This document shows positions 15,001 to 56,842 of a stretch of 64,000 bases of DNA, one piece after another (position 1 is the stretch's first letter; every line of letters starts with the position of its first letter). Both the position numbers and the translations under genes were made by a program. Source of the DNA: Selaginella moellendorffii (Eukaryota > Plantae > Lycopodiophyta); assembly GCF_000143415.4 (NCBI RefSeq), contig NW_003314310.1, positions 986,611-1,050,610 on the forward strand, in the 5' to 3' direction. The notes beneath the pieces were generated by a model. The model had not been told where the DNA came from. It saw only the letters and a list, made by a program, of their open reading frames with translations, and did not search any database.

Positions 15001-16296
15001 GTTAGACAAAGAGGTTGCCCCCTAACTCATTTAAGTTGGTGCATTTCTCACATAGTGTGAGTACCGTGAACTTTTTCTGGAGTTGTTTCCTTGGCGGTAT
15101 TCTAGACTCGTGCATCGACGAGGACGTCGATCTTCCCTAGGGGGGGAGAGTGTCGCGCATGTGACTTCGGGTATCGAAAGTTACCTGTCGACTAGTCCTT
15201 ACGGACACTCTTACCTTACTGCCACGATGGCAGGAGGTCGGTATTGCTGGACCCTTTATCAGCCCCTCTTGTTCAAGTGTTAGTAAACTGGACTTTGCAT
15301 CTGTACTTGGCCGGATGAGCATAAGGACGGAATTCCTAAGTGTCTATTCAGCCAAGCATACTTGGCCTGGCTTTTTAGTTCTCTTTTGCTCTGTCTTGCA
15401 CTAGCTTGACAAGAACCCTCGCGTATTGAGATTGGTCCCTCAATATCGCCGGATGATAGCTTACCGTGTCTGCCAAACACCCTCGCTATCATGCCCTTAG
15501 CGTTAGTCTCAATTCGGTCCCAAATGCTATTTATGGAAAATGTCCAGATTTGCTCATTTGGCATATCTACAGAATGTAGAGATCGGTCTGAACACAATGG
15601 TGTTCGTCCCATGTCCAAATTCACAATCTAGGGACATTCCATATTTAGTAAGTTTCGAGCTTGTCCCAGAGACTAACTCCTGATACTAAGGGAGGCTTGG
15701 GGTGAAAGCCCAAAGTGTGTGTTCCTCAAGGGGGGGGGGCTGTGAGGGGTTCCAAATGTATAGTAGGGATAGTGGGTAGGTTGGGCATGGCCAACCAACC
15801 TGAGGCATAGTCTAGCTCCCGCTTGCGTGCCTGTCCTTGTTTTGCGTCCGGCTTGGGTCTAAGCCCAAGTTCCATTCCATGCTAGTTGGTGGAGTACCCA
15901 TATCCTCACGTTAGGCCACCGGTATGCCGAAATAGCGCCAGACTCCGTTTGGCTCCATTTTGCGTGCTGGTCCTGGCATTGGGATGCTGGTTGTTCCAGG
16001 ACTGTTCCAAGTCGCTCCGGGCCCCTGTCCCTTCGCTCCTTGGGCTTTATGCTCGGGAGTTGCTCCGTGGTTCGGTTCCATCACTCCTTGGCTCCATGCT
16101 TGGGAGTTTGGCACCGTTCCTTTGTTCAGTGGCCCAAGGCCCTGAACCTCAGGTTCTTATGGACACGTGGCATAGACACGTGGCATGTGACACGTGGCAT
16201 CCGTCACGTGGCACAAAGAGGGTTTAGGTTCCGCTTCGTGGTGTTATCCTATGGTAAATCACCATAGGATAAAGGGTCAAAACCACGTACGCTACA
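9046..16296 (+). mobile_element. Full-length non-autonomous LTR retrotransposon, family A (LARD-like, Gypsy-derived)
   Basis: LTRs 9046-10192 and 15151-16296 (TG..CA, ~6 substitutions + 1 indel by eye). TSD CTATC at 9041-9045 and 16297-16301. PBS tggtatcagag (tRNA-iMet) 10195-10205. PPT agggggggagag 15139-15150. No long ORF in the ~5-kb interior. Confidence 0.95.
10058..10110 (+). promoter_or_regulatory. Four tandem G-box/ABRE-like motifs (CACGTGGC) in LTR-A
   Basis: gacacgtggcatagacacgtggcatgtgacacgtggcatccgtcacgtggcac; repeated in the other LTR-A copies with some decay. Confidence 0.55.
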
Positions 16297-16522
16297 CTAT
16301 CTGACCAAACTCAAAACTAATCCAACACTAAGCTACTCAAGAGTAAAAGAAAAATGCAACATAAATGCCGCACCCCACTGATAGAGATTTACAACATCCA
16401 ACATCGCTAACTTTTATTCACAACACAGACAAGCTTATGCCACTCTTTATCCAACCAAACTTAAAACTAATCCAACACCAAACTACTTAAGGAGCAAAAG
16501 CAAGGTTCCCTAAAAAAGAATT

Positions 16523-22280: not shown

Positions 22281-22569
22281 ATAGCGCATCTTATTTCTCT
22301 CCCTTTAAGTCAACTGCAAAAGGGGCAATTGCTTGATGAAAGAGCCCTTAGTGGCTATTTTATCCCTATTTATCCCTCAAAGTTCGAAAGATCCACAGTG
22401 ACAGTATATCCAAATCTCATCTCATGATCACATGTGTTACACTCACCCCCCCCCCCCCTTCAGAAAGTCAATGTCCTTATTAACTATTGACTAACAACCC
22501 TTACTGAGCCATAGAGAACTAACACCTCTATTTCTGCACTAAATCTATTAATCCTTTCATTCATTCATT

Positions 22570-22686
22570 CATAATACACATGGACCAATAGTACAGATAC
22601 ACCTAGTGTAAATGAAATCCACCGGGTGTATGTGTAAATGAAATCCACCGGTGTAAAATCCACCCTTTTATGAATTGCATGCCATA
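22570..22686. mobile_element. Isolated right end/TIR of an IS3EU-like element
   Basis: ...tgaaatccaccggtgtaaaatccacccttttatgaattgcatgccata|caaac resembles 35728-35815 and abuts the same target sequence. Confidence 0.7.
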
Positions 22687-22898
22687 CAAACAAAATTGTG
22701 GCTAAGTTTTCATTTTTTGTTTCTTGTGTTTATAATTGAGTTAGTGGTCTAAACCACCGGGCCGTCGGATGAAGATCGTGCGGTCCCTGACGATTCTAGG
22801 GCGCCATTGTCATCGAATCCTTATCACGATAGGGCGCTCTTGATCGCTCTCCGGATCATCGATTCCAGCGCGCGGCGGCGAGGGTTTCAACTAACCAA

Positions 22899-24535
22899 AT
22901 GGACGAGGAATTGGCTAAGGTGGAGGCTCAAATCGGGCTTCTTGAGCTGCAGATCCAAGCGGCTGGGGAATCTTTTCTCTCTGCCTTTCAGAGTGACAAT
23001 CTATCTCTGGCGGACTATTGGCAGAAGAAGGAAGAGCAGCTGCGGAAGGAAAAAGAACAGCTGCGGAAGGAAAAATTACAGCTGCGGAAGAAGGAACTCC
23101 TCCTCCTCCAATGTAATGGTAAGTCATTCTGTGTGTATTTAGCTTTCCCCCTCGATTTGGGGCGTTTTGCTGTGTGTGTGGTTCCATGTGGCTATGGCTG
23201 CTTTCGGCCATGGTTAAGGATTTTGCCAGAGGTGGCTTCAATTCGCTTTTATTTTGGGTTGCTGGAAGTGTGGCTTTTGGCTATGCTGACGCATGCTCCC
23301 CTGGTCGTCCTTGTATGGCTATGGCTGTTGAGACCCTGGTTTTTTCTTCTAGATCTAATACTAACTTTATTTTGTTCTGAATGTTGCAGTGCACGGACCT
23401 GGTAAGCAATTGGGAAAGCCCTTTGTTTCCTAGCCCATTTTCTGTCCAGTTCTTGGTATTCCATTTGTCCAGTTCTGGATGCTACTTTATCTAGTTGGGT
23501 GTCTTCTCTTTGGGATGACTGGTAGCCTGACACTATAGTTTGCTCAGTTCTGCTCACAAGTCTGTGCGTTCCTCCAAAGCCCCCTTGTTTGCTTTTCATG
23601 TCTGTCTTGTGTTTTACTTGGTCATTCCGCGATGCCTTTTCTTTCAAATTTCGTCGCTGCTAATCTGGTAGCCCTCTCTGTCGAGTACCCTTCGCCTCTC
23701 AGATCTGTGTTGCGAAATCCCTGACCATAACCACACATGGAAGAGATGACTAACCGAGTTCTCCTCTCCCGCAGCAGCCTCTCTTTCACCCGGAGCAGCA
23801 GCAACTCTTTATCCCGGAGCGGCTGCTTTGCTTTCCCTGTCTGGTCACGGTTAAGGATTTTTGCTTCCTGAATCTGTTTCTTTCTTTCTGTGTGGATATT
23901 TGGTAATCTCCGCATCCTTGTGGTCATTCTCACCCCTGTTTGCCCTTTGGCTGTGTTTAATTCTGTGGCCATTCCTCCATAGACTTTATTGTGCCTCTCA
24001 CAGCATCAGCGCCAGCAGCGGGACTTCCTCCAGCCGATTCTTAGGTGCCTGGTAAAAATGATGTCTAGGGGACTGAAAGCCATAATTTTTTGTGTCAGAC
24101 AAGATCGCCTGGGCCAAGAAGCTGAACGAGAACCTGACCGCAGATTTTGCTGACGATGGCACTGACTGGACAAGCCATGCGACTTTTCGGGAGCTCCATA
24201 CTTCCGCTTTCTCTGGAATGGAGTAAAACATACATGTACATGGGTCGCTCACTCTTACAGAGATAAAAAGTTTCGTATCGGCCTTGAGACACGGCACTTT
24301 GGATAATGACAACCTTCCTCCAGACCACTGCTCTCGCTACGGTGGCTGGATATCTTCGGCAACTTTGGAAGAACACCTCCAAGAAGGTCGTCTTTATCAA
24401 TGGCGAATGTTTAATTGACAATCCCTCGAGGACAATGTGGCTGGCTCTTTTGCTGAGCTACATAGACGACCTTCCAGCCGAGCTTTCATGCTGGGGGCTG
24501 GACCTTGAAAGTATTAGAATTTTGGATCCTGATGC
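22899..24535 (+). pseudogene. Crinkler (CR)-like gene copy 1: coiled-coil header exon + truncated P-loop NTPase
   Basis: MDEELAKVEAQI..YWQKKEEQLRKEKEQLRKEK.. then gtaagt; later YMYMGR and TALATVAGYLRQLW..KVVFING. Walker A is deleted here. Confidence 0.7.
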
Positions 24536-24544
24536 TGCGGGTAA

Positions 24545-24830
24545 ATGAAGTGAGTGTTGTGGAGGATTTCAATCCTTGTCCCCCTCAGGATTTTCCAGAA
24601 CTTGCTAAGCCAGAACATCTTTCAGAGGTACACTGGTTTCTTCCTCTCCTTCAAAGCCTTCTCTTCCTGGATTTCATCACCATTGTTATCGGAAAACTTC
24701 ACCTTTGGCTTGTACATGCTGGGATCCTTCTTCTTGATCTTGGCTATCATCTCTAAAATTAGTATCTTTGCAGCACTCCATCTTCCAGTCTTCCTCATTT
24801 GATGGCAAATTCATGTCCAGAAGCTTACAC
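24545..24830 (-). pseudogene. KRI1: KRI1-like (40S ribosome biogenesis) gene fragment, copy 1
   Basis: Minus strand reads ILEMIAKIKKKDPSMYKPKVKF..KERKKPVYL/KDVLA, matching the KRI1 signature KIKKKDP.IY...KP.YLKD. Confidence 0.7.
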
Positions 24831-26159
24831 TTTCAAAGCAATGCCAATTTTGGCCTTTGCTTAGGATAATAATTCAAAGTTGAAGAGATTAGAATACTCT
24901 TTCTTGAGCTAGTCAATTGCTATAATATAAAAACTGTTGGAGGGATTTGAGAAATAAAGGAGCAAAATAAAAATATTGAACAGAAACATTGATGGGAAGA
25001 CCAAAGTGATGAAAGTAAATGTAAAAAGAAATAAAATAAAAATAAAGGGAAGGAAAAAAAAATTTAAAAGTATGAAACAAAAAGGAAAAGTCTCAAATAT
25101 GCAATCCTAAAAACAACTTGCAGTAATAAAAGCTCAAACTCAAGATTGCTTACACTCACCACATATATACATTTGTATAATTGTTGAAAACTGATTTTAT
25201 TGTTAGTATAGATGATTTTGCCACACAATGCAACTGTAAATGGCAATGTGTGGCAACAAGCCAAGCAATAAAACATAAACCCACAAACCTTTATCAACTT
25301 TTATCATTTTATCATTCCAGACACCACAAGCCAAAATCCCTGCTTCATAAACCAGAATTCTGCAACAAGGAAATTCATTGCTCCATTTCTCCAAGAGGAT
25401 AGAGATGACACCTAATGTCTAAAGCACTATACCTCTAATACCATGTGAAGAGTCTCCATCTAACACTCTAAAGAAAGAGAGCAGCTAAAACCTTAAATTG
25501 ACTCAAGCCACTTAGCTTGACTCTAACAGTGGTAAGATAGGATGGCATTGGTGGCTGCCACATTCTCTACTTTGGTGGCAGGAAGACCCTTTATTCACAA
25601 TGTCTAGAGGGATGAGCATACCTATACATAGAAGCTGCTTAAACAAGCTATGGCATGCAATTTGTAAAAGGGTGAGTGTTACTGCAGCAAATTTCACTCA
25701 CAATACAGTGTCCATATGGCAGTTTTCTATTGGTTTGGCATTAAATGTCATTTGGATCCCTCATGGATACCCCATGGATGCTGGCCCGATGGGTTGATGT
25801 CCCCATAATATGAACAATGTTCTATACATAGATGCCACATATCATCAAGTTTGACCCCATGACATAGGGATTCATTAGGTCATAGGGTTTAGGAGATGCT
25901 TCCTTGCTTTAGTGCCTGGTCATGGCAGCAGGGTGCAAGCTGCCCCACTAAGAACCTAACCCTAAAGTGCGATGGAAAGCGCATGTTTCTTGGTAGCAGA
26001 TATTTGCTAGTGATTGGTTTTAAATGTTTTTGTGGGCAGTGTTGGAAGTGGCTTTGATTTACTACTCGATTGCTCTCTATAGACTTTCAAGTTCTTACCA
26101 TGAGTATAGTTCCCTCGCTAGTTTACTTCAAATTTCTGTCACTGAAACTTTTTCTTCTA

Positions 26160-27808
26160 GGTTACTGGAAGACGTGGAGGAAGACAAGATGGATGGCCTT
26201 CCATCCAATTTTAGTGATTCGGACTGCGGTTCCAGTATGGATAGTGACAATGATGCTCTCCTAGAGGTTTGCTTAGTTTCTAGCCTCCTAAATTCATGAT
26301 TTGCACGTTTCTAGGCTTTCTATAATTTTTTGCAATCGAGGGCATTTGGTAGTCCAGCTGCATTTAGCACTTGGATGCACCTGACGATCCTCAAGACTAA
26401 GACTACTGCTTTTACCTCGCATGCTATCTTAGAATTTCTAAGCCAACACTATACAAATACATACGGCTTGTCGATCTAAATTGTAGAGGTGTATATTACA
26501 GAGTACCACCCGAAGAAGTACTTCATCACGTTCAAAATAACAATGCCATGAATTGAGGTGGCACAAACTGGAGGATTATCAATTCTCAATCTAGCTGTCG
26601 AATTGGAGGATACTAGTTTAGCCAATGCCAAATTTGTGAGGCTTTAGCCACTCACGATCCTAGTAGGTTGGAACAAAGGCACATGACAAGGATTCGACAA
26701 TGGATTTATAGGAACGAGGAGGCACTTTGCCATATGGATTGTGAGTATTCTTTCATTTCTGTTTTTTTGTCAACACATGTGGTAACATGCTTATTGTAGC
26801 ATATTGCAAGCTTGTAAGCTATGGTTTCGATGTACATGCCATTATTTGCTGGGCAACTCATTATATTGTAGCTTGCGAGCTAACTACCTCCAAAGAATCC
26901 TATGCAATATTCAACACATATGCACAGGCTGTTCGTCGATTTGCAAGGCCCAAGCACATCCGAAGCGACAATGCTCCAAAACACAATGAGGTTGAGAGGG
27001 ACAGAGTCCTACAGCTAGGAGCTTCATATGTGGGACATCAACACATAACTAGGTACTCACAGCATTAAAGTTTTTCCAAATAAGGACTAAATCAAATTTG
27101 TTTTGCAGCCTATAAAGCATTTGTGGAGAGAGCTCTTTGAGTGTGTGGTGTGGTTTTATAAGCACCTTTTTGAGTCCATGGAAGATATAAGAATTCTCGA
27201 TGTATCTAATCCATAGCACAACTAGAGTCTATGTTGTGGTTTTGCTCCGTACCTCAAGAAGGATATTTCACATTGGGTTGCAACCTGGAACGTCCATGAG
27301 GTCCGTCCGTATTGACGTGGTGATTACTTTAAACCATCTTATGTTCCTGCAAACTTATTTCAACCGATGGAACGAGAGTTTGGGTAAGAATTTTGGTAAT
27401 GTTACAGAATTCTTTATTAATTGTGCTTTTGTAGGATTATGCTGGCTGTTGGTGGAAAAGATATTGAAAATGTTCCTGGACCATTTCTCTCCAATATCGA
27501 AGGTGCAACTCTGTCAAAGGTAATCTTTAGAACAAAAATAGAACAATTTCTTTAAATCTATTTTGTTGTTTTTAGCTACCTTACAGGCTCATGGCACTGT
27601 TCGAAACCAAGCATTTTTTATGCATCAGGAGGGACTCAACTTGGACGAACAATATCTACTTCATTTGGATCTAATAATGGAGTGTGCAATGGCTGATGTT
27701 GCAGGTGTAGATCTACCACTTTACATTGAGAGTGCCTTGCCTATAACAACACCAGTGAAGCAAGGAGTTTTGGAAAAATTATACTTGGCCATACTTGGAG
27801 AAAATTGA
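26160..27808 (+). pseudogene. Intron-containing DDE integrase/transposase (IS3/IS3EU-like core)
   Basis: LCHMD|..KLVSYGFDVHAIICWATHYIV..YAQAVRRFARPKHIRSDN..|IKHLWRELF..FYKHLFESMED.RILDVSN..WVATWNVHEVR resembles WHxD..KL..vHG.ID..P.RVR.D.G.EN..IERLWRDV..WN.H. The third catalytic E is mutated to K; several stops. Confidence 0.8.
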
Positions 27809-29305
27809 GTGTTTTTTAGTGTACATTTTAAATTTAAATTCAATTCTTGATTTCTTCAATTTTAGGGTTCCCACATTCGAGATTTGGGTTTACACCAAGT
27901 CCCACCCATATTAATTGTGCCTTGGATACGAGGCAATTTCATTTTATGACATGATTTTGTCGATGGTTCATTCGTTCTTCCAATTGATTCACGTCATTTA
28001 ACTGGAGGCAAGGCTTTTAATGCACACTCCCCCAATCGCAAGACCATCGCCCAAGCAAGAGCGCCACAGCTATGATGGTGGGTAGCTTCTCCTTGATCAA
28101 GTTTGCATAATCAATCCCTTGTGGTTTCTAGGTTCGAAGCAAGAATGCTGCACGCCTCAATACCAGTAGACACTATGCAGGAAACACCTCGTGAGCATGC
28201 AACTAAGCACTTGATGTTCCGCAATCGGTACAGCTAACAATCCTGCGAGACACATGCCAACCACTTGATTTTCCAAGCTCCACAACAAGGACATCAACTC
28301 CAACAACATCCCATCCATAGCTCTTGATTGCATTTGAGCAAGTAGAGTGCCACCTAACATTGCATACATTGCAACATATGCAGAACCTCTAACATGTTTC
28401 CTTCTCCTCACCTTCCTTGGAAAGTAGCAGCCCGAATGTCCAAAATGAGCAAGTCTGAATACCTCATGCCCACAGTGTTGTCCAATCTAGAATGTTGCCA
28501 CCAACACCAAGTATAAGACGTGCTCACGGAACCCCATATAGTGCCACTGCTACCAGCCCCACAACTCCACTAGCTGCTACTACTCTCGCAACTCCATCTA
28601 CTGGTACAAGTGTCAGTACTTGGCCATCTACCTCCCGAAGCAACAAGCGGTCTAGCTCAGTAGGTTTGTCATTTGTACCTATCTTTTTTCCATGTGTTGT
28701 TTTGCATAGGGTGAGTTGACAATGCCGCCACACTAGCAAGCTTATAGTTCCTCATCAGCATTCCACAACTACTCCCAAGGATCGACATCATCATTTAGTG
28801 GAGCTTCAACATCCAGATATATTCAAGCTGATGCTCAAGGTGGGCTGCCATGTGAGCCACAAGTATAACATGACCCTATGCACTCTTCATTTCTTTTTTC
28901 TTTGGATTTGTTTAACTCATTTTCGTTTTATTGTGCTAGACTCTCTCACCGCTTGTGGCTGTAGTGCACACCTATACCGATTACAATCGGTAGTCCTTAT
29001 TTTGTCATCGTGGACATCGTGGCAGTCAATCCAAAGTCATTGGTGGGATGTCACCTACGACACCCTTGGTCCCCCGCCCGTTCACCACAGTTCTTATCAC
29101 GAAGTGGATTGCAATCCCGAAAACTTTTTTGCACACTTGTATGGGCAGAAAAGATAGCCATCTGTGAAAGTGACGGAACTTGACGAGCTGGCAGTGGACC
29201 TCCCAAAGTGTCTCATATGGGGTGGCTTATACTCCAGTATTCCTTTCCAGCCCAGCACGGCCCAACATGCAATTCTACTATCACTCCAAGCCTCAAGAAT
29301 CCAAC

Positions 29306-31170
29306 TGTGAGACACAAAATCCCTAGGCCCCAAAGTGGAGCCGAAAGGGTGCCACGTGGTAGTGGCCAAAGTGAAAGCCAAATGAACATAACATGTTTGG
29401 ACTAAAAGCTCCGACTTGAAAGGTTGAGAGCGGGAGTGGAACTCCCAACGAAGTGTTCGAGGAACAAGCACAAAGCAAGCAATGAGTGAGTCTCTAGAAA
29501 AGGGACACAAGAGGACCAACACATGACACGTGGCAGAGTCCGAGATGGAGTTCGAGACGGAGTCCGAGATAGAGTCCGAGATGGACCCGAGATGGAGTTC
29601 GAGACAGAGTCCGAGATGGAGTCCAAGATGAAGTCCGAGATGGACCCGAGATGGAGTTCGAGACAAAGTCCGAGATGGAGTCCGAGATGAAGTCCGAGAT
29701 GGACTCGAGATGGAGTTCGAGACAGAGTCCGAGATGGAGTCCGAGATGGACCCGAGATGGAGTCCAAGATGGACCGAGACGGAGTTTGAGATGGAGTCCG
29801 AGATGGACCCGAGATGGAATCCGAGATGGAGTCCAAGATGGACCCGAGATGGAGTCCGAGATGGAGTCCGAGATGGACCGAGACGGAGTCTAAGATGGAG
29901 TTCGAGATGGAGTTTAAGATGGACCCAAGATGGAGACCGAGGTCGAGACTGAGACCGAGACCAAGACCGAGACTGAGACCGGGACCGAGACCAAGACCGG
30001 GGTTGAGACCGAGACCAAGATCGGGACCGAGACCGAGACCGAGACCGAGGCCGAGGCCGAGACCAAGCCCGAGCCCGAGGATGAGTCCGAGTCCGAGTTC
30101 GAGTCTGAGTCCGAGTCCGAGTCCGACTCTAAGTCCGAGTCTGAGTCCGAGTCCAAGTCTGAGTCCAAGTCTGAGAGGGTGAAAGCCCAAAGCGTTTGTC
30201 TCCCAAACCCTGGGGGGTTTGGTGAGCTCCAAAAGTATAGTGAGGGGGAGAACTGCAGTGGAGCCAGTTTGGCCAAGAAAGGCTAGTTTGGCCCAGGAAG
30301 GCTGTACCCAGTGTTGGGTGGTGAGCTACCCACTAGAAAGTCCAAGACTAGGGTGAACATGGACTGACAAGCAAGGTAACTTGGTGAAGTGTTCAAGAGT
30401 CGGCTCTAGTTCCCCTAGGAGATCGACTGGCTGATACTCCCAATCCAAGTGTGGGTGGCACTACATACTTGGATACTTGGCATGGCTCAACGGAACCTCG
30501 CTCTAAGCCCATGGCTAGAGCACCCAAAGGCGGAAGGCGAGAAGAGTACCCACGAGGCTCGCGTAAGGCTACAGTGTTCCGAAATGTTGCCCCAAAGTCC
30601 CAGACTGTGAAAAGGAAAAGGAGCCATCTTTTAGTGTGGAAGTCAAGGATACGGTTGTGTGAGGAAGAAGTCCCAGAGGACCGTAGGACTTAGTAGTCGA
30701 GCTTGTGGGCTTTGATCCAATGGCAATGTTGGCGAACACGGCCATGAACAAAAAGGGACATGGTGGGGACTAGAAAAGGGGTATTGGGGAAAGCTAATCC
30801 CCATGTCTGTGGGCATCCTAAGGATGCTAAGGAGTGGATTTAGGATGATCACTCATGGATGGATGGCCCAGTCCTTGAGAGACGGGACTGTGATGCAAGT
30901 GGTGTTAGACCACCGGTGTGACCAAGGTGAAGGGGCATGGCCTTAGCGTAACAGGTTGATAAGTCAATGGTACCTTGGGGTGTCGGTCATGGGATCAGAC
31001 ACATGGAGCACTTGGACCAAGTGCAAAGGTTGAGTGGCGGGGATGCTATTCTTGGGGCTAGCAAACCCAAGTCCAAAATAGGACTTATGGAGGTTGTGAG
31101 TGAGATTCCTCCAAGTGGTCAAAGGTGTGGTTAAGTGACTAAAGTAGAATGGAAAATTAAGTCGCTTACA
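29306..31170 (+). mobile_element. Solo LTR, family B
   Basis: TGTGAGAC...CTTACA with TSD CCAAC (29301-05, 31171-75). Homologous (inverted) to the LTR at 55741-57527. Confidence 0.92.
29538..30176. repeat. Tandem array (CCGAGATGGA[G/C]-type 11-12-mers, then GAGACC and GAGTCC hexamers) inside LTR-B
   Basis: Directly visible; produces spurious repetitive ORFs. Confidence 0.95.
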
Positions 31171-34100
31171 CCAACCTTCATCCATGACCAACCCAGAAGC
31201 ATTTGTCCAGCATGCAAGGCAGTCCAATGGTGGTGAGGCCCATGCCGAGTTTGCAAAATTTGGCCTCAGCTCTATCCGGCCTTGCTATTAGCCTCCTCAA
31301 ACATCATGGGGAACTATAACAAACAAGGCCAATAGCAACCAGGTAACAATAATATACCTATACAATATTATGGAGCATTTTATTGACAAACATTAGCTAA
31401 GTTATCAAAAACAGGCCCAAACATTCGAGGAGAAGGATGTTCGTGAACATAAGTCATTTTGTTTTTTAAGTTCCCTCCTCACAAATATATGTTGTGGTCT
31501 TTGCAGTTGTAGCTACTACAAATACCTTGACTGCAAATGATGATCCATTGGTGATAGAGCCATTTCTCCCAAGGCTAGCCATGCAAGAACTAAACCAAGA
31601 CGAGAATAATGAAGAAGAAGACTTTGTGGATGAAGAGGACATTCTTCCATTACCGAAAGATACTCTCCCCATACAAGACAACATCACTGGAGTCAAAGAA
31701 TAAGGTGATAGTGGGGATGAACCGCATCAAAGATCTCCGGAGAGATCCTTGTCACCAGAGATAGTGGCTCCAAGCCATGTGGCTAGTAAAAAGCATTAAC
31801 ATAAATGAATATTTTCTTCATTTTCTAATTTTTAAGTGCAGATAAGCCAATGGTAATGTATGACAGTGATGGCGGAGGCTTTGAAGACCATGGTGTGCTT
31901 CCACCCCCCTTTCTAGAGGGAAGTAGCTCCACTTCATTTACTCTTATGGAGTTGCTTGACAACTTTTCTATAGTAGAGTAAGATAATTGAAAATTATGCC
32001 ATTCAAAATTGAACTAACATTTGCATGTAGATTGTTTGAGCGTCAACAACAATAAATTGATGCTACTAATGCATTTAATGAAGTTGTTCTATTAACCACT
32101 CAAAATAATGACAACTTCATCATGCTGTAGCATGAGGAGGTTTCTACCTTACAGAATGCCACTACAGCCCTTGAGGCGAGGGCACAAGGGGATGTTGAAG
32201 TTCTCTCACAAGTGTAGTGGCTGAAACACAAGCTTCTTAGTTATTTTGGTGTGGAGAGCACAAGTGACAAATAGATGCTAGACGTTGTTGCTAGACACTC
32301 TAAGTTATATTGGGCTAGCGATGAAATATTTCTTCAGCGTGTGCTTTTTCAACCATGCCATGCTTCATTGGTAGGATTGAGAGAGTGTTCTCCTTAAGCT
32401 TGGCCTTTCAGAAGCGCAGTACGAAGATGTGTTTTGTGACAATACAATCCAACAACTCCTTGCTAAAGTAAGTATCAATGTGCCTTCTTCAATTATTGAG
32501 TCCACAATAGTATGGTTCATTAAAAAGAGGTATGTGTATCTATTTCTTAGCACTTAGTAACATTTTATTATTTTGTGCAAGGACCTACGTAGAAATTGGG
32601 TGGCTACACAACAATTAAGAGAACTATTTGACACTACTGAAACACTGTATTGTAAGTTCTCTCGTTTTTGCATCGAGAAAGCCATCCTTTGGCCATACAG
32701 ACTTGCTCGTACACGTTTGAGGCCGTCTCACATTCTGGTAAGCAATGGATTGCTTATGAATTGAAGTTCCCTCACTTGTCCTTCCAGATTACACCAAACA
32801 ATGAATTCAGTTGTTTCTAATTCACCTTCAATACTAATCTCTGCACACTGAATTATAAAGTGGTCTATGCATTTGAGATTGGAGGAGCTTTGGTGTGGGA
32901 GGAATCCACAATAGATGCGGGTGGGCCACATGCAAAAGCCATTAAGAAGGCTGTTCACCAAATTTCAGGATCGGTAAGTTTAATTTTCATTTGGCTCACT
33001 AGAGTAACTTTGTGTTACAGATGCATGGACTGTTTATGCTTAGGGAAGGAGCCACATATTGGCATCCCAGGATGCTAATGCATTTTAGGATGTTAGGACA
33101 AGAAGAGCGAGATGTGGTAAGTTAGGTTTAAAGCACAAGTTTTATATGCTCCTCATTTCTATATGCACAGGCTATCTTTGTGGGATGGTTGCTATTCCAA
33201 ATGTTCGAATGTAATGCACAGGTATTTCGCAGGTGTACAATTGCAATATTGGCAATTGCAGCCCGAGAAGTTCCAGATGAGAATGATTGATGACTTGCCC
33301 AAGGAAGACTATATGAGATGGACCTCAAGGCATACGTGCCGTATATCTGGAATGCACTTAACCAATTGCGAGGTGCATCAAGCCTAAAGGAGGAGGGCGA
33401 TGTGGATTCCATCTTAGAGAACCTTGCATTTACTGACTACAACACAGTGCTTGAGTCTAGACTCACCGAACTTGGTGAAGGTTATGAGCAAGTTGTGGAG
33501 GCATGCGTGGCTGTGGTGGTCTGGCATTACCTATTCATCGAGCCAAACGTAGTGGGATATTTACTCCGAGATGGCTTCCAACACTCAATGTGCATGGAAG
33601 CTCGTCAGAGGCCTTACAAGGGTCTAGCATTGTTAGGTGGGCTTTCACTCATTGGGAGAGATGCTTTGTTACAAGTCTTCCAGGTAAGGATGATCATTCC
33701 TTCCATGGAGTTCATCAACTGCCTAATCTTTGATCAGGACTTTGGAGAGAACTTCCACAGCTGGATTGTGGACATCATTCGAGGTAACTATTTACTTTCA
33801 GAAACAACTAAAACTCTTGTATGTTTGAACATTTTATAAATATGAGCCTGAAAGAGTTATCCAAGTTCCATCACTTTGTAGTTGATTCTCTAGAGCTCCG
33901 ACCGGGAGAGCCTATTTGGATCCACATTGAGAGACAGGGTACATCATCTACTCAATTTTCCAGGTTCTCCACATGCACACGAGAAGTTTTCTTCCCTTTA
34001 ACATACTTGTTAATGGAGTGGACCACAAGATCCATCGGGCACTCCAAAATCTAGAGAGTTTGTACGGATTGGGCTGATGTTGTGGAAGTACCATAATCTA

Positions 34101-34834
34101 GACACTTTCACAATAAAAATAGATAATTATTTTGAAATATGTTTCACACTTTTAAAGAGACTCTTTCTAGTTCATTGGCGAAGTTAAAGGTAAGAATATT
34201 TAAAATATTCCATAAATGCCCATTATAGGCACTTGCGGCCCTTTTGGCTTATGCTTGCCTCACCAAAGGTAATCACTATAGCTTCCAAAGTAGCTCCTTG
34301 TTTAGGATTTGGGTCAAAATTATTGAGTTTGGGTGCTACATGATGCCCATCCTCGCTTGAGGAACTCTCAACCTATTTCATAGTAGAATCAAAATCACCC
34401 TCTGGGTCTGTGAACTTGTCCTTGCTTGCATCTCGAGAAGTAACATATCCCTTGCTGTCACTTTCTTCAGCAAGACTTTTCCCCTCGGTGACTGGCACAA
34501 CATTAAAAGTAGTCTTGGGCTGCCTTGTTAGAGGGATTATCAAGTCTTGAGAAGAGGAGGCATCATATAGAATCCTTAGTCCTGTCCTTTGTTGGATCCA
34601 TTATTGTGCCTCAAAAGAAGTCATAGAATCCTCTCCAATTTGCCATGTCAGGAGGAAACCCAAAAACCTCAAACATTACAAAAGGGTTAGAGTATATAGA
34701 AAACTGTCACAAATTTACTTTTACCAAAGTGAGCATGAGCTTCCAATCTCTGAAAAATCCAATTCTTCAACCGTAGCGTGTAGCATACATTGGATAGTTT
34801 TGCCCCATGCTTGGAAACCCTTTTTACAAATTTC

Positions 34835-35108
34835 AAAATTTGAAATGATTATGATTGGAAAATATTGTAAGTGTCCATTGTTATTGCTCTTCTCACCTAA
34901 ATGTTACCACATGCAATTGCAACTTTCATATTCTCAAATCTCCTTTAGCATGCTCCTCTTAAGAGAACTCTAAGTCCAATTTGAAACAATTATAATTGGA
35001 AAATGTTGAAAGTGTCTTATGTTATCCTAAATGTTACTACATGCAATTGCAACTTCCACATTCTCAAATCTCCTTCAACATGCTCCTGTTGAGAGAACTT
35101 CAGGTCCA
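34835..35108. repeat. ~135-bp tandem duplication inside the TIR element
   Basis: atttgaaa..attat.attggaaaat.ttg.aagtgtc...gagaact occurs twice. Confidence 0.8.
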
Positions 35109-36012
35109 AACATTAACACTATGCACCTTTGTGTAGTATACAATTGAAGTATGAGCCCCACCAATTCATCGAATTGCTTAAACTTCAATCTACTTTTGAG
35201 TCATATGCAAATCTTTTAAGCATCATGGTACAAAACTAAAGTGTTAAGAGAGTTACATTGGAAATCAATGGCAACGAAAGATAAACTCAATGAGATGCAT
35301 TAAAGACATAACTCCAGACAATATATATCCATGGCTTTCCAATCTTTCAAATCTTTCCTTCTTTCAAATCAACTTGGAAAGATTGGAAACTCCATCTTCC
35401 AGATCCTTAGCCTAGATGGAGTTCACTTACACTTGCTATGAACACTATGTTAAAAGAGGTGTGCCAAAAAAGGATAATTTAGTTCTTTTGCCATGAGTGC
35501 CAAGAGCAAGATGTGAGAACATAGTGCTCTAGATAGGGTAGTATGGTATGCAATTTAGTCAATTGTCTATTTAGTTTGCAACATTAACAATTTGCTAGAA
35601 TGCATGGGATGAATGGGTCTATGGGCCATGAATGGCTCCATTCCATAGCATGGGTCATTGCTATGGGCATTATGCCACATCTGGGGCATAAGGATTGGAT
35701 ATTCCTAAAATTTGTTTTTTTCACACTCATAATACATGTGACCAATAGCAGGCATACACGTGGTGTGAGTGAAATCCACCGTTGTAAAATCCTTTTTTAC
35801 AAATTGCACACCATACAAACAAAATTGTGGTTAAGTTTTCACTTTTTGTCTCTTGTGTTTATAATTGAGTTAGTGGTCTAAACCACCGGATGAAGATCGT
35901 GCGGTCACTGACGATTCTAGGGCGCCACTGTCGGGTTTCACGATAGGGCGCTCTTGATCGCTCTCCGGATCATCGATTCCAGCGCGCAGCGGTGAGGGTT
36001 TCAACTAACGAA

Positions 36013-37675
36013 ATGGACGAGGAATTGGCCAAGGTGCAGGCTGAAATCGAGCGTCTTGAGCCGCAGATCCAAGCGGCTGGGGGATCTTTTCTCTCTGCCT
36101 TTGAGAGTGGCAATCAATTTCTGGCGGAATATTGGCAGAAGGAGGAAGAGCAGCTGCGGAAGGAAAAACAGCAGCTGCGGAAGAAAAAATTACAGCTGCG
36201 GAAGAATGAACTCCTCCTCCTCCAATGTAATGGTAAGTCATTCTTTGTGTATTTAGCTTTCCCCCTCGATTTGGGGCGTTTTGCTGTGTGTGTGGTTCCA
36301 TGTGGCTATGGCTGCTTTCGGCCATGGTTAAGGATTTTGCCAGAGGTAGCTTCAATTCGCTTTTATTTTGGGTTGCTGGAAGTGTGGCTATGGTGGCTTT
36401 TGGCTATGCTGCCGGTGGACGCATGCTCCCTTGTGGATCCTTGGTCGTCCTTGTATGGCTATGGCTGTTGAGACCCTGGTTTTTTCTTCTAGATCTAATA
36501 CTAACTTTGTTTTGTTCTGAATGTTGCAGTGCGCGGGTAAGCAATTGGGAAAGCCCTTCGTTTCCTTTCACATGCATCCCCATTTTCTGTCCAGTTCTTG
36601 GTATTCCATTTGTCCAGTTCTGGATGCTACTTTAATGCTGTCTGTCTAGTAATAGTTGGGTGTCTTCTCTTTGGGATGACTGGTATGTTTTTCGGCCTGA
36701 CACTAGAGTTTGCTCAGTTCTGCTCACAAGTCTGTGCATTCCTCCCCCTTGTTTGCTTTTCATATGTTTACTTGGTCATTCCGCGATGCCTTTTCTTTCA
36801 AATTTCGTCGCTGCTAATCTGGTAGCCCTCTCTGTCGAGTACCCCTTCGCCTCTCAGATCTGTGTTGCGAAATCCCTGACCATAACCACACATGGAAGAG
36901 ATGACTAACCGAGTTCTCCTCTCCCGCAGCAGCCTCTCTTTCACCCGGAGCAGCAGCAACTCTTAATCCCGGAGCGGCTGCTTTGCTTTCCCTGTCTGGT
37001 CATGGTTAAGGATTTTTGCTTCCTGAATCTGTTTCTTTCTTTCTGTGTGGATATCTGGTAATCTCGGTCATTCTCACCCCTGTTTGCCCTTTGGCTGTGT
37101 TTAATTCTGTGGCCATTCCTCCATAAACTTCGTTGTGCCTCTCACAGCACCAGCGCCACCACCAGCGGGACTTCGTCCAGCCGAGATTGACGTGCCTGGT
37201 ATGAATGATGTCTAGGGGACTGAAAGCCGTAATTTTTTGTGTCAGACAAGATCGCCTGGGCCAAGAAGCTGAACGAGAATCTGACCGGACACTGACTGGA
37301 CAAGCCATGCGACTTTTCGGGAGCTCCATACTCCCGCTTTCTCTGGAATGGAGTAAAACATACATGTACATGGGTCGCTCACTCTTACGGAGATAAAAAG
37401 TTTCGTATTGACCTTGAGACACGGCACTGACAACCTTCCTGGAACTCTGGGCTCTGGGAAGACCACTGCTCTTGCTACTGTGGCTGGATATCTTCTGCAA
37501 CTTTGGAAGAACACCTCCAAGAAGGTCGTCTTTATCAATGACGAATGTTTCATTGACAATCCCTCGAGGACAATTGTGGGTGGCTCTTTTGCTGAGCTAC
37601 ATAGACGACTTTCCAGCCGAGCTTTCATGCCGGGGGATGGACCTTGAAAGTATTAGAATTTTGGATCCTGATGCT
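36013..37675 (+). pseudogene. Crinkler-like gene copy 2 (header + truncated NTPase)
   Basis: MDEELAKVQAEIERLEPQIQAAG..; GTLGSGKTTALATVAGYL (Walker A); frameshifts. Confidence 0.7.
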
Positions 37676-37684
37676 GCAGATAAA

Positions 37685-37935
37685 TGAAGTGAGTGTTGTG
37701 GAAGATTTCAATCCTTGTCCCCCTCAGGATTTTCCAGAACTTGCTTAGCCAGAACATCTTTCAGGTACACTGGTTTCTTGCTCTCCTTCAAAGCCTTCTC
37801 TTCCTTTATTATCGGAAAACTTCACCTTTGGCTTGTACATATGCTGGGATCCTTCTTCTTGATCTTGGCTAGCATCTCTAAAATTAGTATCTTTGCAGCA
37901 CTCCATCCTCCAGTCTTCCTCATTTGATGGCAAAT
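37685..37935 (-). pseudogene. KRI1: KRI1-like fragment, copy 2
   Basis: Paralogous to 24545-24830. Confidence 0.65.
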
Positions 37936-38544
37936 ACAAGCCTACACTTTTTAAGCAATGTCAATTTTGGCCTTTGCTTGAGGATAATAATTCAAAGTTG
38001 AAGAGATTAGAATACTCTTTTTTGAGCTAGTCAATTGCTATAATATAAAAACTGTTGGAGGGGTTTGAGAAATAAAAGAGCAAAATAAAAATATTGAATA
38101 GAAACATTTATTGGAAGACCAAAGTGATGGGAAGTAAATGTAAAAAGAAATAAAATAAAAATAAAGGGAAGGAAAAAAAATTAAAAAGTTATGAAACAAA
38201 AAGGAAAAGTCTCAAATATGCAATCCTAAAAACCATTTGCAATAATAAAAGCTCAAACTCAAGAATGCTTACACTCACCACATATATGCATTTGTATAAT
38301 TGTTGCTATAGAAAATGAAAACTAATTTTGTTGTTAATATAGATGATTTTGCCACACAATGGCAATGTGTAACAACAAACCAGGCAATAAAAAATAAACC
38401 CACAAACCTTTATCAACTTTTATCATTTTTTCATTCCAAACACCACACACCTCATAAACCAGAATCTACTACTATAAGGAGCAAACGCCAAACTTTGTGG
38501 GCCGCCGGATCCAGCCAATCGGGGCCATCCGATGGGGGGTAACT

Positions 38545-38865
38545 GTAAAGGGGTTATTTCTTTAACCACGTGTTAGCGAATAATCGCGCTGATGTTTGCC
38601 CCCGGCCAATGGGAGGCGGCCAAGCCATGTGGGGCGGGAGAGGAAGGCCCAGCGACGCATGGCACATGCAAAGTGTTGACCGGAGATTGCTGCTCCAGGG
38701 CGTCACTCCGGGCAGGATCAAGTGGGTCGTGGCCCTTGGAGCGTGCTGTGGATCGCGATTTCTTCCGGTGGGTAAGCAAATCCACTCCCAAATGGTTGCT
38801 GCTGGCTGGGATTCGAGCTTGATCCTGTCTACTGCGCTGATTGACATGTATGCCACGTGTGGCAG
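38545..38865 (+). pseudogene. PLS-class PPR gene fragment (Helitron cargo)
   Basis: VVALGACCGSRFLPVGKQIHSQMVAAGWDSSLILSTALIDMYATCGS, continuing as L after the LTR insertion. Confidence 0.85.
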
Positions 38866-41800
38866 TGTAGTGCACGTGGTTTTGACCCTTTATCCTATGG
38901 TGATTTACCATAGGATAACACCACGAAGCGGAACCTAAACCCTCTTTGTGCCACGTGACAGATGCCACGTGTCACATGCCACGTGTCCATGCCATGTGTC
39001 CATAGGAACCCGAAGTTCAAGGCCTTGGGCCATTGAACGAAGGAACGGTGCCAAACTCCCAAGCATGGAGCCAAGGAGTGACGGAACCGAACCACGGAGC
39101 AACTCCCGAGCATAAAGCCCAAGGAGTGAAGGGACAGGAGCCCGGAGTGACTTGGAACAGTCCTGGAGCAACTAGCATCCCAATGCCAGGACCAGCACAC
39201 AAAACGGAGCCAAACGGAGTCTGGCGCTATTTCGGCATACCGGTGGCCTAACGCGAGGATATGGGTACTCCACCAACTAGCATGGAATGGAACTTGGGCT
39301 TAGACCCAAGCCGGACGCAAAACAAGGACAGGCACGCAAGCGGGAGCTAGACTATGCCTCAGGTTGGTCGGCCATGCCCGACCTACCCACTATCCCTACT
39401 ATACATTTGGAACCCCCCACAGCCCCCCCCCCCCTTGAGGAACACACGCTTTGGGCTTTCACCCCAAGCCTCCCTTAGTATCAGGAGTTAGTCTCTGGGA
39501 CAAGCTCGAAACTTACTAAATATGGAATGTCCTTAGATTGCGAATTTGGACACGGGACGAACACCATTGTGTTCAGGCCGATCTCTACATTCCGTAGATA
39601 TGCCAAATGAGCAAATCTGGACACTTTCCATAAATAGCATTTGGGACCGAAATGAGACTAACACAAAGGGCATGATAGCGAGGGTGTTTGGCAGACACGG
39701 TAAGCTATCATCCAGCAATATTGAGGGACCAATCTCAATACGCGAGGGTTCTTGTCAAGCCAGTGCAAGACAGAGCAAAAGAGAACTAACAAGCCGGGCC
39801 AAGTATGCTCAGCTAAATAGACACTTAGGAATTCCTTCCTTATGCTCATCCGGCCAAGTACAGATGCAAAGTCTAGTTTACTAACACTTGAACAAGAGGG
39901 GCCAATAAAGGGAACCAGCAGTACCGACCTCCTGCCATCGTGGCAGTAAGGTAAGAGTGTCCGTAAGGACTAGTCGACAGGTAACTTTCGATACCCGAAG
40001 TCACATGCGCGACACTCTCCCCCCCTAGGGAAGATCGACGTCCTCGTCGATGCATACTCGAGTCTAGAATACCGCCAAGGAAACAACTCCAGAAAAAGTT
40101 CACGGTACTCACACTATGTGAGAAATGCACCAACTTAAATGAGTTAGGGGGCAACCTCTTTGTCTAACGCGGATGCGCTACCAGCTCAGACACCTTTCAG
40201 CCGTCGCCGACAAGGAAATGACCAACGGAGTTAGCCACCCTTGCTGCTCTGGGAGTCACCCAGCTTACAAAAGTGTGATATGCCCTGCCCGCAGGAACAT
40301 AGAGAGAGAAGCCAGAAGCCCCAACCCTCCTAAGCAAAGAAACCAAACCCGTCGGTAAGGTTTAGATAGACTACTGTAAACAGGCAGTTAGAGTTGTTTA
40401 CACGGTCACGCCCTTTTAACGGAATAAGGAACATCGACAGAGAGGCGGGTTATGTGACTAGTCTACAGTAGCTACCCCATGACTAGAGATTTCAACATGC
40501 ACACGAAGTGCCGAAGCCAGTCCGCCTATACTAGCCCAAACTCAAAGATCAATAGATGGACAATATCAAAGTCAGAGACAATGATATTTTAGAAGGTTAA
40601 TTATCAGTGATTATATCTTAGAGTAGAACACAAAAGTATTCTAAGCAAGTTATCATCCGATAAACCAATAGTATTGTACAGGAACCACCAAGATCATCAT
40701 AATTGGTAAATATAGGATTCACCATCAAACAAAATTCAATAGCAAGTATATCATCAAGTAAACTCAATGATAAAGTTTAACTATTAAAGATTGCAGATAG
40801 AATACTAAACAACTTACGAAAGACAACTCAAAGAACACAAAGTATCATTGACTGATAAGCAAAATGCTCGCGAATGTATCACCCAAAGGAAATAACATCC
40901 AAATCTATCAAAACTAACTTGAGCAACAATCAACAGAAGAGAATGAATGTGGTAAGACCAACAAACACTCATTCCTGCCAACTATCACAAAAACTAATCT
41001 GAATAGATCCCAGCCAACAATACCAAGGAACTCAAGTTGCCTAAGCAAGTGTCAGCAACATCCTACTAATGTCTCAAACCCAAGAGACCAATCCAAAGCA
41101 AATCACAAAGAACATGTGATATTGCGAAAAGCCACAAGCCATCAAAGAGAACAACTAACAATCATGAAAGATCATCAATCATCCCATCAATAAAGAGATG
41201 CATAATCATCGTCTAAGAAAGAATCCACTACCTCAAAGAGCAACGAATCATTCTATATCAACAACAACCAAGCAAAACCCTTGACAAGGATAATCAACTA
41301 TCTTAGATGATAATTAATCATCACCAATGATTGCCAGATGCAAATACTAACGTCAACATCGAAGCTAATGAGCCAAAATGCCTTCCCCAACAACTTCGAA
41401 CAAATGGAACAACGATCATAAAACTCAAAGAACCAAAAGCTCGAAGAAGTCTATAGCTAAGTCTTGCCTAATAATGATCACAAGCTTTGCATAAACTAAC
41501 TTCAATGCTAAAGAAGAAATCATGGTACAACCCACAATATCCTCCTCAACACATCCATAAGCTAAACTTCATAATGCAAAGCTAATGAAGAGCATGTCTG
41601 CATCAATCCAAAAGCTAAGCATAACAAAGCTATGCTTAACAAGTGATCATCAAACGATCCTCCATGAATCCATCTATAGCAAGACGTAACTCACATCATA
41701 ACAAGCACAAGAAGAATCATCAATGATCGATATATTCCAACTCAAATCCAATAAGGATTCAAACATTCTAATATCAATCACTAACTCTTCCGCTTGTAGA

Positions 41801-46155: not shown

Positions 46156-46224
46156 GGCAGCTTGCGAGGCGATGAAGACAGTAGTAGCAGGATTTTGCTC
46201 CTGGAAGAATTGTTTGTGGCCTGT

Positions 46225-50660: not shown

Positions 50661-50674
50661 TGCTGCAGATAAAT

Positions 50675-50930: not shown

Positions 50931-51992
50931 CAAGCCTACACTTTTGAAGCAATGCCAATTTTGGCGGATAATAATTCAAAGTTGAAGAGATCAGAATACT
51001 CTTTCTTAAGCTAGTCAATTGCTATAATATAAAGACTGTTGGAGGGGTTTGAGAAATAAAGGAGCAAAATAAAAATATTGAATAGAAACATTTATTGGAA
51101 GACCAAAGTGATGGGAAGTAAATGTAAAAAGAAATAAAATAAAAATAAAGGGAAGGAAAAAAAATTAAAAAGTTATGAAAAAAAAGGAAAAGTCTCAAAT
51201 ATGCAATCCTAAAAACCATTTGCAATAATAAAAGCTCAAACTCAAGATTGCTTACATTCACCACATATATGCATTTGTATAATTATTGCTATAGAAAATG
51301 AAAATTGATTTTGTTGTTAGTATAGATGATTTTGCCACACAATGCAACTGTAAATGGCAATGTGTGGCAACAAGCCAAGCAATAAAATATAAACCCACTA
51401 ACCTTTATCAACTTTTATCATTTTGTCATTCCAAACACCACAAGCCAAAATCCCCACCTCATAAACCAGAATTCTGCAACAAAGAAATTCATTGCTCCAT
51501 CTCTCCAAAAGGATATAGATGACACCTAGTGTCTAAAGCACTATGCCTATGATACCATGTGAAGAGAAGCTAGCCTCTCCACCTAATACTCTAAAAAAAG
51601 AGAGCAGCTCTCACAAAATAGGAAAAAAAACTAAGAAGCTTAAATTGAAGGAATGTGACTCAAGCCATTTGGCTTGACTCTAAGACAGGATGGCATTAGT
51701 GGCTGCCACATTCTCTACTTTGGTGGCAGGAAGACCCTTTACTCACAACCTCCAGAGGGATGAGCACACCTATACATACCGCTTAAACAAACAAAATTGT
51801 GGCTAAGTTTTCACTTTTTGTCTCTTGTGTTTATAATTGAGTTAGTGGTCTAAACCACCGGGCCGTCGGATGAAGATCGTGCGGTCCCTGACGATCATCG
51901 AATCCCTAACCCTAGCTAATATATAGGGCGCTCTTGATCGCTCTCCGGATCATCGATCCCAGCGCGCGGCGGCGAGGATTTCAACTAACGAA

Positions 51993-56810: not shown

Positions 56811-56842
<32 letters not shown>

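What the first reader, a model, noticed from the sequence alone, without database searches (positions are those of the whole stretch)
25649..35815. IS3EU-like DNA transposon with a HECT ubiquitin-ligase passenger in a land plant
Seen: imperfect ~50-bp TIRs with TAT..ATA ends, an apparent 5-bp TSD (caagc/caaac), and empty sites in three sister repeats that fix the boundaries. Inside lie an intron-containing IS3-like integrase core and a co-oriented gene with HECT hallmarks (DAGGP; STC..F.P..Y). Established, from memory: IS3EU elements have TAY..RTA termini, encode a second protein, and were reported from animals and a fungus. Inference: a plant lineage of this superfamily carrying an E3 ligase that could target host silencing factors. 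This copy is dead (stops, catalytic E>K, solo LTR).
Basis: partly seen in the sequence, partly recalled or inferred. Interest (0 to 1): 0.75.

Follow-up and report, generated by a model that had tools for sequence, protein, structure and literature searches.

The report
Dead GingerRoot transposon carrying HECT-like gene
This 10.2-kb stretch is a long-dead copy of a cut-and-paste jumping gene of the IS3EU/GingerRoot kind, already described in spikemosses, in Selaginella moellendorffii; its unusual feature is a very divergent ubiquitin-ligase-like (HECT) gene, or domain, next to the transposase, which I found in no searchable paper.

Summary
Imperfect ~54-nt inverted ends (TATGG..CCATA) sit at 25649 and 35815. 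A 5-bp duplication (CAAGC/CAAAC) flanks them. Three uninterrupted sister sites in the same window fix both boundaries. Inside lie an HTH plus an intron-containing DDE integrase core with E>K at the catalytic glutamate, about 30 stops, and a nested solo LTR (29306-31170). A co-oriented HECT-like region follows (32788-34074; DAGGP; catalytic-Cys motif STC).

The genome is Selaginella moellendorffii. The transposase matches Pfam PF24764. Its core signature closely resembles published S. lepidophylla GingerRoot transposases, which belong to the same lineage as IS3EU. A plant IS3EU lineage is therefore already known (GingerRoot, 2019), not new.

The HECT call rests on a sub-threshold Pfam hit in two intact sister copies, protein-language-model neighbours, a predicted-structure match and UniProt's name. 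My own AlphaFold model failed. Gene models at two other loci join integrase and HECT into one CDS.

No searchable paper links IS3EU or GingerRoot with HECT. The proposed role against host silencing is untested. This scan has reported the same family at several other places in this genome. Verdict: a new variant of a known kind, of moderate interest.

The parts
25644..25648 (.). Left target-site duplication (CAAGC, one mismatch to CAAAC)
   Evidence: comparison with the empty sites AAACAAACAAAATTGTGG.
25649..25702 (+). Left terminal inverted repeat, TATGGCATGCAATTTGTAAAA..CACTCACA
26162..26742 (+). Transposase N-terminal exons, including a helix-turn-helix (HTH_17-like, 26401-26553) and the first catalytic D (26737-26739, CHMD). 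Stops at 26297, 26312, 26554 and 26614.
   Evidence: Pfam; tblastn of P0014; motif coordinates.
26799..27065 (+). Integrase-core exon (YCKLVSYGF..IRSDNAPKHNE) with the second catalytic D at 26967-26969
   Evidence: Pfam rve and rva_4 at E 2e-5; tblastn of P0003.
27112..27760 (+). Integrase-core C-terminal half and downstream conserved region. The catalytic E is replaced by K at 27115-27117 (IKHLWRELFE). Six stops.
   Evidence: The equivalent part of P0014 scores 51 bits on PF24764.
28111..28665 (+). Ser/Thr/Pro-rich linker exon, joined to the integrase in gene models P0014 and P0003
   Evidence: tblastn.
29306..31170 (+). Nested solo LTR (TGTGAG..CTTACA) with 5-bp TSD CCAAC. It contains a tandem-repeat tract and splits the exon ..LLSLQASRIQ | PSSMTNPEAFV..
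   Evidence: A sister LTR lies at 55741-57527 (-), 81% identical.
31171..32743 (+). Acidic and helical N-terminal region of the HECT-like protein (short introns, many stops)
   Evidence: tblastn of P0002 and P0014.
32788..34074 (+). HECT-like domain, without introns. DAGGP at 32914-32928; catalytic-Cys motif STCTREVFFPLTY with Cys at 33974-33976. At least 3 frame changes and 6 stops.
   Evidence: Pfam HECT at E 2e-4 and 4e-4 in sister copies P0002 and P0014. Atlas.
34075..35761 (+). 3' region with no recognisable gene in this copy. It holds an internal ~130-bp direct duplication and a 15-nt copy of the terminal motif at 35542.
   Evidence: Pfam found nothing. Duplicated translated pieces at 34855-34959 and 34985-35089. 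Terminal motif.
35762..35815 (-). Right terminal inverted repeat
35816..35820 (.). Right target-site duplication (CAAAC)
22566..22686 (-). Truncated right end (~120 bp) of a second copy, at the same site of the preceding tandem unit
51785..51802 (+). Empty (uninterrupted) target site in a sister unit. Two more lie at 48802-48819 and 63739-63756.

Best explanation
This is a fossil copy of a multi-copy IS3EU/GingerRoot-type DNA transposon of Selaginella moellendorffii. It is about 8.3 kb before a solo LTR landed in it.

In active family members, the mechanism would run as follows. An HTH plus DDE (integrase-like, PF24764) transposase binds the ~54-nt TATGG..CCATA inverted ends. It cuts the element out and pastes it in, leaving a 5-bp duplication as read here. 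These steps are inferred from the family.

The family also encodes, downstream and in the same orientation, a very divergent HECT-type ubiquitin-ligase-like domain. Intact sister copies keep the catalytic Cys 35 residues from the C-terminus. It may even be part of the same long protein as the transposase.

I take this to be a dedicated accessory function rather than a recently captured gene fragment. Most likely it is a Cys-dependent E3 that either modifies a host restriction or chromatin factor, or ubiquitinates the transposase itself to clear the post-integration complex. That role is inference.

This copy inserted about 180 bp upstream of a gene in a ~3-kb tandem paralogue array. It was probably then duplicated with its unit, and it has since decayed completely.
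For: Mobile unit: the TIRs, the TSD and three empty sister sites show the 10.2 kb was inserted as one piece.

Organism and copy number: all 13 homologues of the HECT-like piece among 1.84 billion representatives are S. moellendorffii proteins at 61-98% identity.

Transposase family: PF24764 scores 51.1 and 41 bits (cut-off 26) in sister copies P0014 and P0003. Read by eye, the core CHMDSYCKLVSYGFYVHAIICGATHYIV..IFNTYAQAV..IRSD matches about 19 of 32 residues of the published S. lepidophylla GingerRoot SL_GR-020 segment. It is far less like the Ginger2 rows.

Termini: TA..TA termini, TAYGG..CCRTA ends and TIRs over 30 bp are published IS3EU traits.

HECT: Pfam HECT is the only hit for P0002, at E 2.2e-4, and scores E 3.7e-4 for P0014; both align to the C-lobe. 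In the Atlas, 29 of 30 feature neighbours are HECT clusters (score 0.95, 200 of 256 features shared). The Atlas's own model aligns to HECT E3s at TM 0.56-0.60 over about 300 residues. UniProt names D8R6H2 'HECT domain-containing'.

Linkage: P0014 (1299 aa) aligns colinearly over 26162-34074. Gene models at two other loci join integrase and HECT.
Against: - The HECT assignment stays below Pfam's cut-off (21.4 against 23.9 bits) and covers only the C-lobe.
- phmmer and profile searches of PDB sequences found nothing.
- My AlphaFold model was unusable (pLDDT 44).
- The TSD reads as 5 bp, whereas IS3EU and GingerRoot are published with 6 bp.
- I made no phylogeny of the DDE core.
- Nothing shows that any copy is, or ever was, expressed, or that the ligase is active.
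- No relatives were found outside S. moellendorffii.
Confidence: 0.85

Rival explanations
1. The HECT-like region is a host gene, or gene fragment, picked up by one GingerRoot lineage (Pack-type acquisition). It was then carried along passively, with no role in transposition.
For: 28.6% of S. lepidophylla GingerRoot elements carry host gene fragments (PMC6839031). I have no evidence of selection on the HECT part.
Against: The domain is complete, with the catalytic-Cys motif and a canonical C-terminal distance. No host parent was found: every homologue is an element-type copy, and two are joined to the integrase. It is so divergent from canonical HECT that a recent capture is unlikely; published captures are 79-98% identical to their parent gene.
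Confidence: 0.1
2. The HECT resemblance is spurious. The second region is an unrelated, lineage-specific protein.
For: The Pfam score is below the cut-off. There were no PDB sequence hits. My AF2 model failed. The Atlas model is itself of low confidence (pTM 0.48).
Against: Four largely separate lines of evidence all point to HECT and to nothing else: the Pfam profile on two copies, language-model neighbours (29 of 30), structure matches over about 300 residues, and UniProt's rule-based name. In addition, DAGGP lies at the domain start and the TC..LP.Y-type motif 35 residues from the end.
Confidence: 0.07
3. It is the interior of an LTR retrotransposon, with the 88%-identical flanking ~3-kb units (22632-25646 and 35763-38465) as its LTRs.
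For: Direct repeats flank a 10-kb interior that holds an integrase.
Against: The same units stand head to tail with no interior at 48804/51787, and again at 63.7 kb. No RT, RNase H, protease or gag was found in any stop-free piece. The interior has its own TIRs and TSD. The integrase is of the PF24764 type, with introns.
Confidence: 0.01
4. It belongs to Ginger1 or Ginger2/TDD (Gypsy-integrase-derived DNA transposons) rather than to IS3EU/GingerRoot.
For: The original paper found GingerRoot's best Repbase match to be Ginger2. The generic rve profile also hits.
Against: PF24764 scores higher than rve (41 against 31.6 bits, and 51 bits in P0014). The core signature matches the GingerRoot and IS3EU rows, not the Ginger2 rows, of the published alignment. 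The termini are TA..TA. The N-terminus is an HTH rather than an HHCC finger.
Confidence: 0.03

Closest known systems
GingerRoot DNA transposons of Selaginella lepidophylla (Cerbin et al. 2019, PMC6839031)
   Same: Same plant genus. TA..TA termini, a DDE transposase with a closely similar core signature, a size of 4-13 kb, multiple copies, and mostly inactive.
   Different: The published TIRs are 100-150 bp and the TSD is 6 bp; here they are about 54 nt and 5 bp as read. The paper mentions neither HECT, nor ubiquitin, nor S. moellendorffii.
IS3EU superfamily (Repbase; Kojima and Bao 2023, PMC10045372; Kojima 2025, PMC12730594)
   Same: One lineage with GingerRoot. Shared traits are TAYGG..CCRTA ends, TIRs over 30 bp, no HHCC finger, an N-terminal HTH-like region, and accessory genes beside the transposase.
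   Different: The TSD is usually 6 bp. The accessory genes described are an alpha-kinase and a TET/JBP dioxygenase in fungi, not a HECT ligase.
HECT-type E3 ubiquitin ligases (PF00632)
   Same: A domain of about 365 residues at the C-terminus, a DxGG-type motif at its start, a catalytic Cys 35 residues from the end in a TC..(F/L)P.Y context, and a predicted-structure match at TM about 0.6.
   Different: The sequence is extremely divergent, with Pfam below its cut-off and only for the C-lobe. It is encoded inside a transposon. No activity is known.

Membership tests
IS3EU/GingerRoot DNA transposons | DDE transposase of the IS3/IS481-like integrase type | tested here: met
   PF24764 scores 51.1 and 41 bits (cut-off 26) in sister copies. 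The window exon scores 24.9 bits. The triad sits at D 26737, D 26967 and E>K 27115. The signature is shared with the published SL_GR rows.
IS3EU/GingerRoot DNA transposons | TA..TA termini (TAYGG..CCRTA) with TIRs over 30 bp | tested here: met
   TATGG..CCATA, about 54 nt; the published traits are.
IS3EU/GingerRoot DNA transposons | 6-bp target-site duplication | tested here: inconclusive
   It reads as 5 bp (CAAAC). Six bp (ACAAAC) is possible only if the terminal A is counted as flank. This is one independent site only.
IS3EU/GingerRoot DNA transposons | No HHCC zinc finger; HTH-like N-terminal region | tested here: met
   HTH_17 at E 6.6e-6 on 26401-26553. No zinc-finger family was hit upstream of the core.
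IS3EU/GingerRoot DNA transposons | Phylogenetic placement of the DDE core inside the clade | not tested
   The reference sequences exist only as text in a supplement. I did not retype them. The comparison was by eye.
HECT E3 ubiquitin ligases | Profile match to the HECT domain | tested here: inconclusive
   Pfam scores 21.4 and 20.7 bits against a cut-off of 23.9, for the C-lobe only. The Atlas features and structure agree. There were no PDB sequence hits.
HECT E3 ubiquitin ligases | Catalytic Cys about 32-36 residues from the C-terminus | tested here: met
   P0002 ends ..FSTCTREVFFPLTY..LYGLG, with the Cys 35th from the end. The Cys codon is kept at 33974-33976 in the window. The usual distance is from my own knowledge.
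HECT E3 ubiquitin ligases | Ubiquitin thioester formation and transfer | not testable with these tools
   This needs biochemistry.
LTR retrotransposons | RT, RNase H and gag between two LTRs | tested here: not met
   No such domain was found. The flanking repeats also occur in tandem with no interior.

The most novel reading that the evidence does not exclude
The Selaginella GingerRoot family would be the first described transposon with its own HECT ubiquitin ligase, possibly fused to the DDE transposase in one ~1300-residue protein. The ligase would be needed for transposition. It would either remove a host restriction or chromatin factor, or ubiquitinate the transposase to dismantle the stable post-integration complex, a step for which retroviral integrases are thought to depend on host ligases.
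Probability: 0.3. Interest if true: 0.7.

Novelty: new variant of a known kind. Interest (0 to 1): 0.45.

Why it matters
Transposons are known to carry ubiquitin-like-modifier proteases, kinases and DNA demethylases. I found no report of a HECT ligase inside a DNA transposon in the searchable literature.

If the ligase is functional, it would give a concrete handle on how an integrase-type transposon deals with host silencing or with its own strand-transfer complex. It would also extend the catalogue of accessory genes of the poorly studied IS3EU/GingerRoot superfamily.

This particular copy is only a fossil. Its value is the clean empty-site proof that the HECT region lies inside the mobile unit.

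Tried and rejected
1. Pfam on the window's own HECT-like pieces gave no hit at E<1. phmmer against PDB gave nothing for the pieces, P0002 or the family profile.

2. AlphaFold2 of P0002 with the 14-sequence family alignment gave pLDDT 44 and pTM 0.26. That is too poor for a fold search, so none was run.

4. I looked for relatives outside S. moellendorffii and found none:
- the representative search with the 181-aa piece;
- three word-indexed searches, of the HECT region and of two transposase regions;
- the Atlas on the whole fused model;
- a metagenome scan.
Another agent's note that HECT genes occur in related transposons of other organisms therefore could not be reproduced here.

5. Other agents report a small RNA:DNA-hybrid-binding gene for this family. 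I found no Pfam hit in any stop-free piece of at least 28 aa in 34050-35815 or 25649-26200, on either strand. Around 34229-34385 (+) I could see at most a faint, unconvincing motif resemblance.

6. The LTR-retrotransposon reading of the flanking repeats was rejected.

Exons were searched piece by piece by reference, and database gene models (P0002, P0003, P0014) served as intact stand-ins.

8. I did not retype the published IS3EU and GingerRoot sequences, so no tree was made.
Full report
**Boundaries.** The left end starts TATGGCATGCAATTTGTAAAA at 25649. The reverse complement of the right end starts TATGGTGTGCAATTTGTAAAA at 35815. The repeat finder reports this pair as a 21-nt core, 90% complementary. 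The ends stay alignable for about 54 nt and share a GGATTTCACTCACA box. A global alignment of the two 60-mers scores 22. The null from 20,000 real 60-mers of the window is -9.8 +/- 4.6; seven reached the observed score, and these probably include the element's own ends.

**Empty sites.** The flanks belong to a ~2983-bp unit that is repeated in tandem in the window. The units lie at 22686-25646, 35815-38465 onward, 48804-51790 and 51787 onward, with another copy near 63.4-64.0 kb. In three of these copies the sequence AAACAAACAAAATTGTGG runs uninterrupted, at 48802, 51785 and 63739. At the finding it reads ..AAACAAGC | TATGG...CCATA | CAAACAAAATTGTGG. The whole 10,167 bp is therefore an insertion.
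- The target duplication reads as 5 bp (CAAAC), with one later mismatch on the left.
- A 6-bp reading (ACAAAC) is possible only if the last A of the right end is counted as flank.

**A second, truncated copy.** About 120 bp of a second right end sits at 22566-22686, at exactly the same site of the preceding unit. The two units are 88% identical. I think element plus unit were duplicated together after a single insertion. Two independent hits on the same site cannot be excluded.

**Content.** A representative search with the longest HECT-like piece (33294-33836) found only 13 proteins, all 61-98% identical. All five that I looked up are Selaginella moellendorffii gene models, which names the genome. 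A word-indexed search added P0014.
- P0014 (1299 aa) and P0003 (1200 aa) join an integrase and the HECT-like region in one CDS.
- P0002 (747 aa; UniProt 'HECT domain-containing protein') covers the second half.
- P0014 aligns colinearly to 26162-34074 of the window.
- Its one large gap is filled by a nested solo LTR at 29306-31170. The LTR has TG..CA ends and a 5-bp TSD CCAAC, and it splits an exon.
- Without the LTR the element is about 8.3 kb.

**Transposase.** The window exons give HTH_17 (E 6.6e-6) and rve/rva_4 (E 2e-5). The better-preserved sister models score 41 and 51 bits on PF24764, whose cut-off is 26.
- The triad is D at 26737-26739 (CHMD), D at 26967-26969 (IRSDN), and K where sister copies have E at 27115-27117 (IKHLW against IEHLW).
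- Short introns interrupt the core, at about 26743-26798 and about 27066-27111.
- About 32 stops and several frame changes relative to P0014 show that this copy is dead.

**Family.** The literature sets out the family traits.
- IS3EU has TA..TA termini and usually 6-bp TSDs. Rust-fungus IS3EU end in TAYGG..CCRTA with TIRs over 30 bp (PMC10045372 and PMC12730594).
- GingerRoot was described from Selaginella lepidophylla, with reads also found in other lycophytes and mosses. It has TA..TA termini and 6-bp TSDs (PMC6839031).
- GingerRoot forms one lineage with IS3EU at 99% bootstrap.
- In the published alignment, the S. lepidophylla row SL_GR-020 reads LWHMDSYDKLAVYGFRFHGIIDGATRFIV..IFNNYARAV..LRAD. 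The family here reads CHMDSYCKLVSYGFYVHAIICGATHYIV..IFNTYAQAV..IRSD. That is about 19 of 32 identical residues in the first block by eye, far closer than to the Ginger2 rows.

The element is therefore a GingerRoot/IS3EU member. A plant lineage of the superfamily has been known since 2019. I made no tree, because the reference sequences exist only as supplement text.

**HECT-like region.** The window's decayed pieces hit nothing in Pfam or PDB. The sister copies give more.
- P0002 has Pfam HECT as its only hit (E 2.2e-4, 21.4 bits, cut-off 23.9). P0014 scores E 3.7e-4. Both align to profile positions 213-301 of 306, the C-lobe.
- For residues 380-747 of P0002, 29 of the 30 nearest Atlas clusters by language-model features are HECT clusters (score 0.95, 200 of 256 features shared).
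- The Atlas's own predicted model aligns to HECT E3s with TM 0.56-0.60 over about 300 residues.
- P0002 ends ..FSTCTREVFFPLTY..LYGLG, with the Cys 35 residues from the C-terminus, the usual place of the HECT catalytic Cys (my own knowledge). A DAGGP motif sits at the domain start.
- My own AlphaFold run with the shallow family alignment failed (pLDDT 44), and I did not use it.

I rate a true HECT fold at about 0.9. The domain is contiguous in the DNA (32788-34074), while the upstream parts have short introns.

**Is it a passenger?** The empty sites prove that the HECT region lies inside the mobile unit here. Two further loci have integrase and HECT colinear in one gene model. No host parent and no relative outside this species was found. 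The domain is far more divergent from canonical HECT than the 79-98% identity reported for GingerRoot gene captures. I therefore favour an old, dedicated accessory gene or domain. Whether it is fused to the transposase cannot be settled without transcripts.

**Function.** This part is inference only. One possibility is a Cys-dependent E3 acting on a host restriction or chromatin factor. Another is ubiquitination of the transposase itself to clear the post-integration complex.

**Literature.** No paper in the searchable library holds IS3EU together with HECT, or GingerRoot together with HECT. The GingerRoot paper mentions neither HECT, nor ubiquitin, nor S. moellendorffii. The accessory genes described for IS3EU are an alpha-kinase and TET/JBP in fungi.

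**Earlier notes of this scan.** The same family has been reported at several other places in this genome, with the same reading. I reached the identification before opening those notes.
- One note claims 5-bp TSDs for the family, which fits my copy.
- One claims HECT genes in related transposons of other organisms, which I could not reproduce.
- Several claim a small RNA:DNA-hybrid-binding gene, which I could not detect in this copy.

**Limits.**

Noticed in passing
window 22686-25646, 35815-38465, 48804-53864, ~63385-64000: The insertion target is a ~3-kb tandem array of decayed paralogues. Each unit starts with a coiled-coil ORF (MDEELAKVQA..) followed by a P-loop NTPase ORF (GTPGSGKTT). The element sits about 180 bp upstream of the first ORF. 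Another note of the scan calls the 63.8-kb copy a Crinkler/RHS-type NTPase gene.
   Followed up: partly
window 35542-35556 (+): The terminal 15-mer TATGGTATGCAATTT recurs once inside the element, 260 bp from the right end and in left-end orientation. The similarity stops after 15 nt. It may be chance or an old subterminal binding site.
   Followed up: partly
window 22607-22649 (-): The truncated second right end carries the box GGTGGATTTCATTTACA twice in tandem, where the complete element has it once per end. It is a candidate transposase-binding motif.
   Followed up: no
window 9045-16298 and 38864-46156: Two copies (93% identical, opposite orientation) of a 7.3-kb LTR element with 1147-bp LTRs that are 99.4-99.6% identical within each copy. 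No ORF of 250 aa or more was found in the first copy (9045-16298), the only one checked, so it looks young but non-autonomous or decayed. The second copy interrupts the tandem unit right of the finding.
   Followed up: no
window 29536-30250 and 56750-57290, 59700-60080: A degenerate tandem-repeat tract lies inside the solo LTR and its relatives. In translation it gives runs such as SPRWTRDGVRDG, which produce long spurious ORFs on both strands.
   Followed up: no
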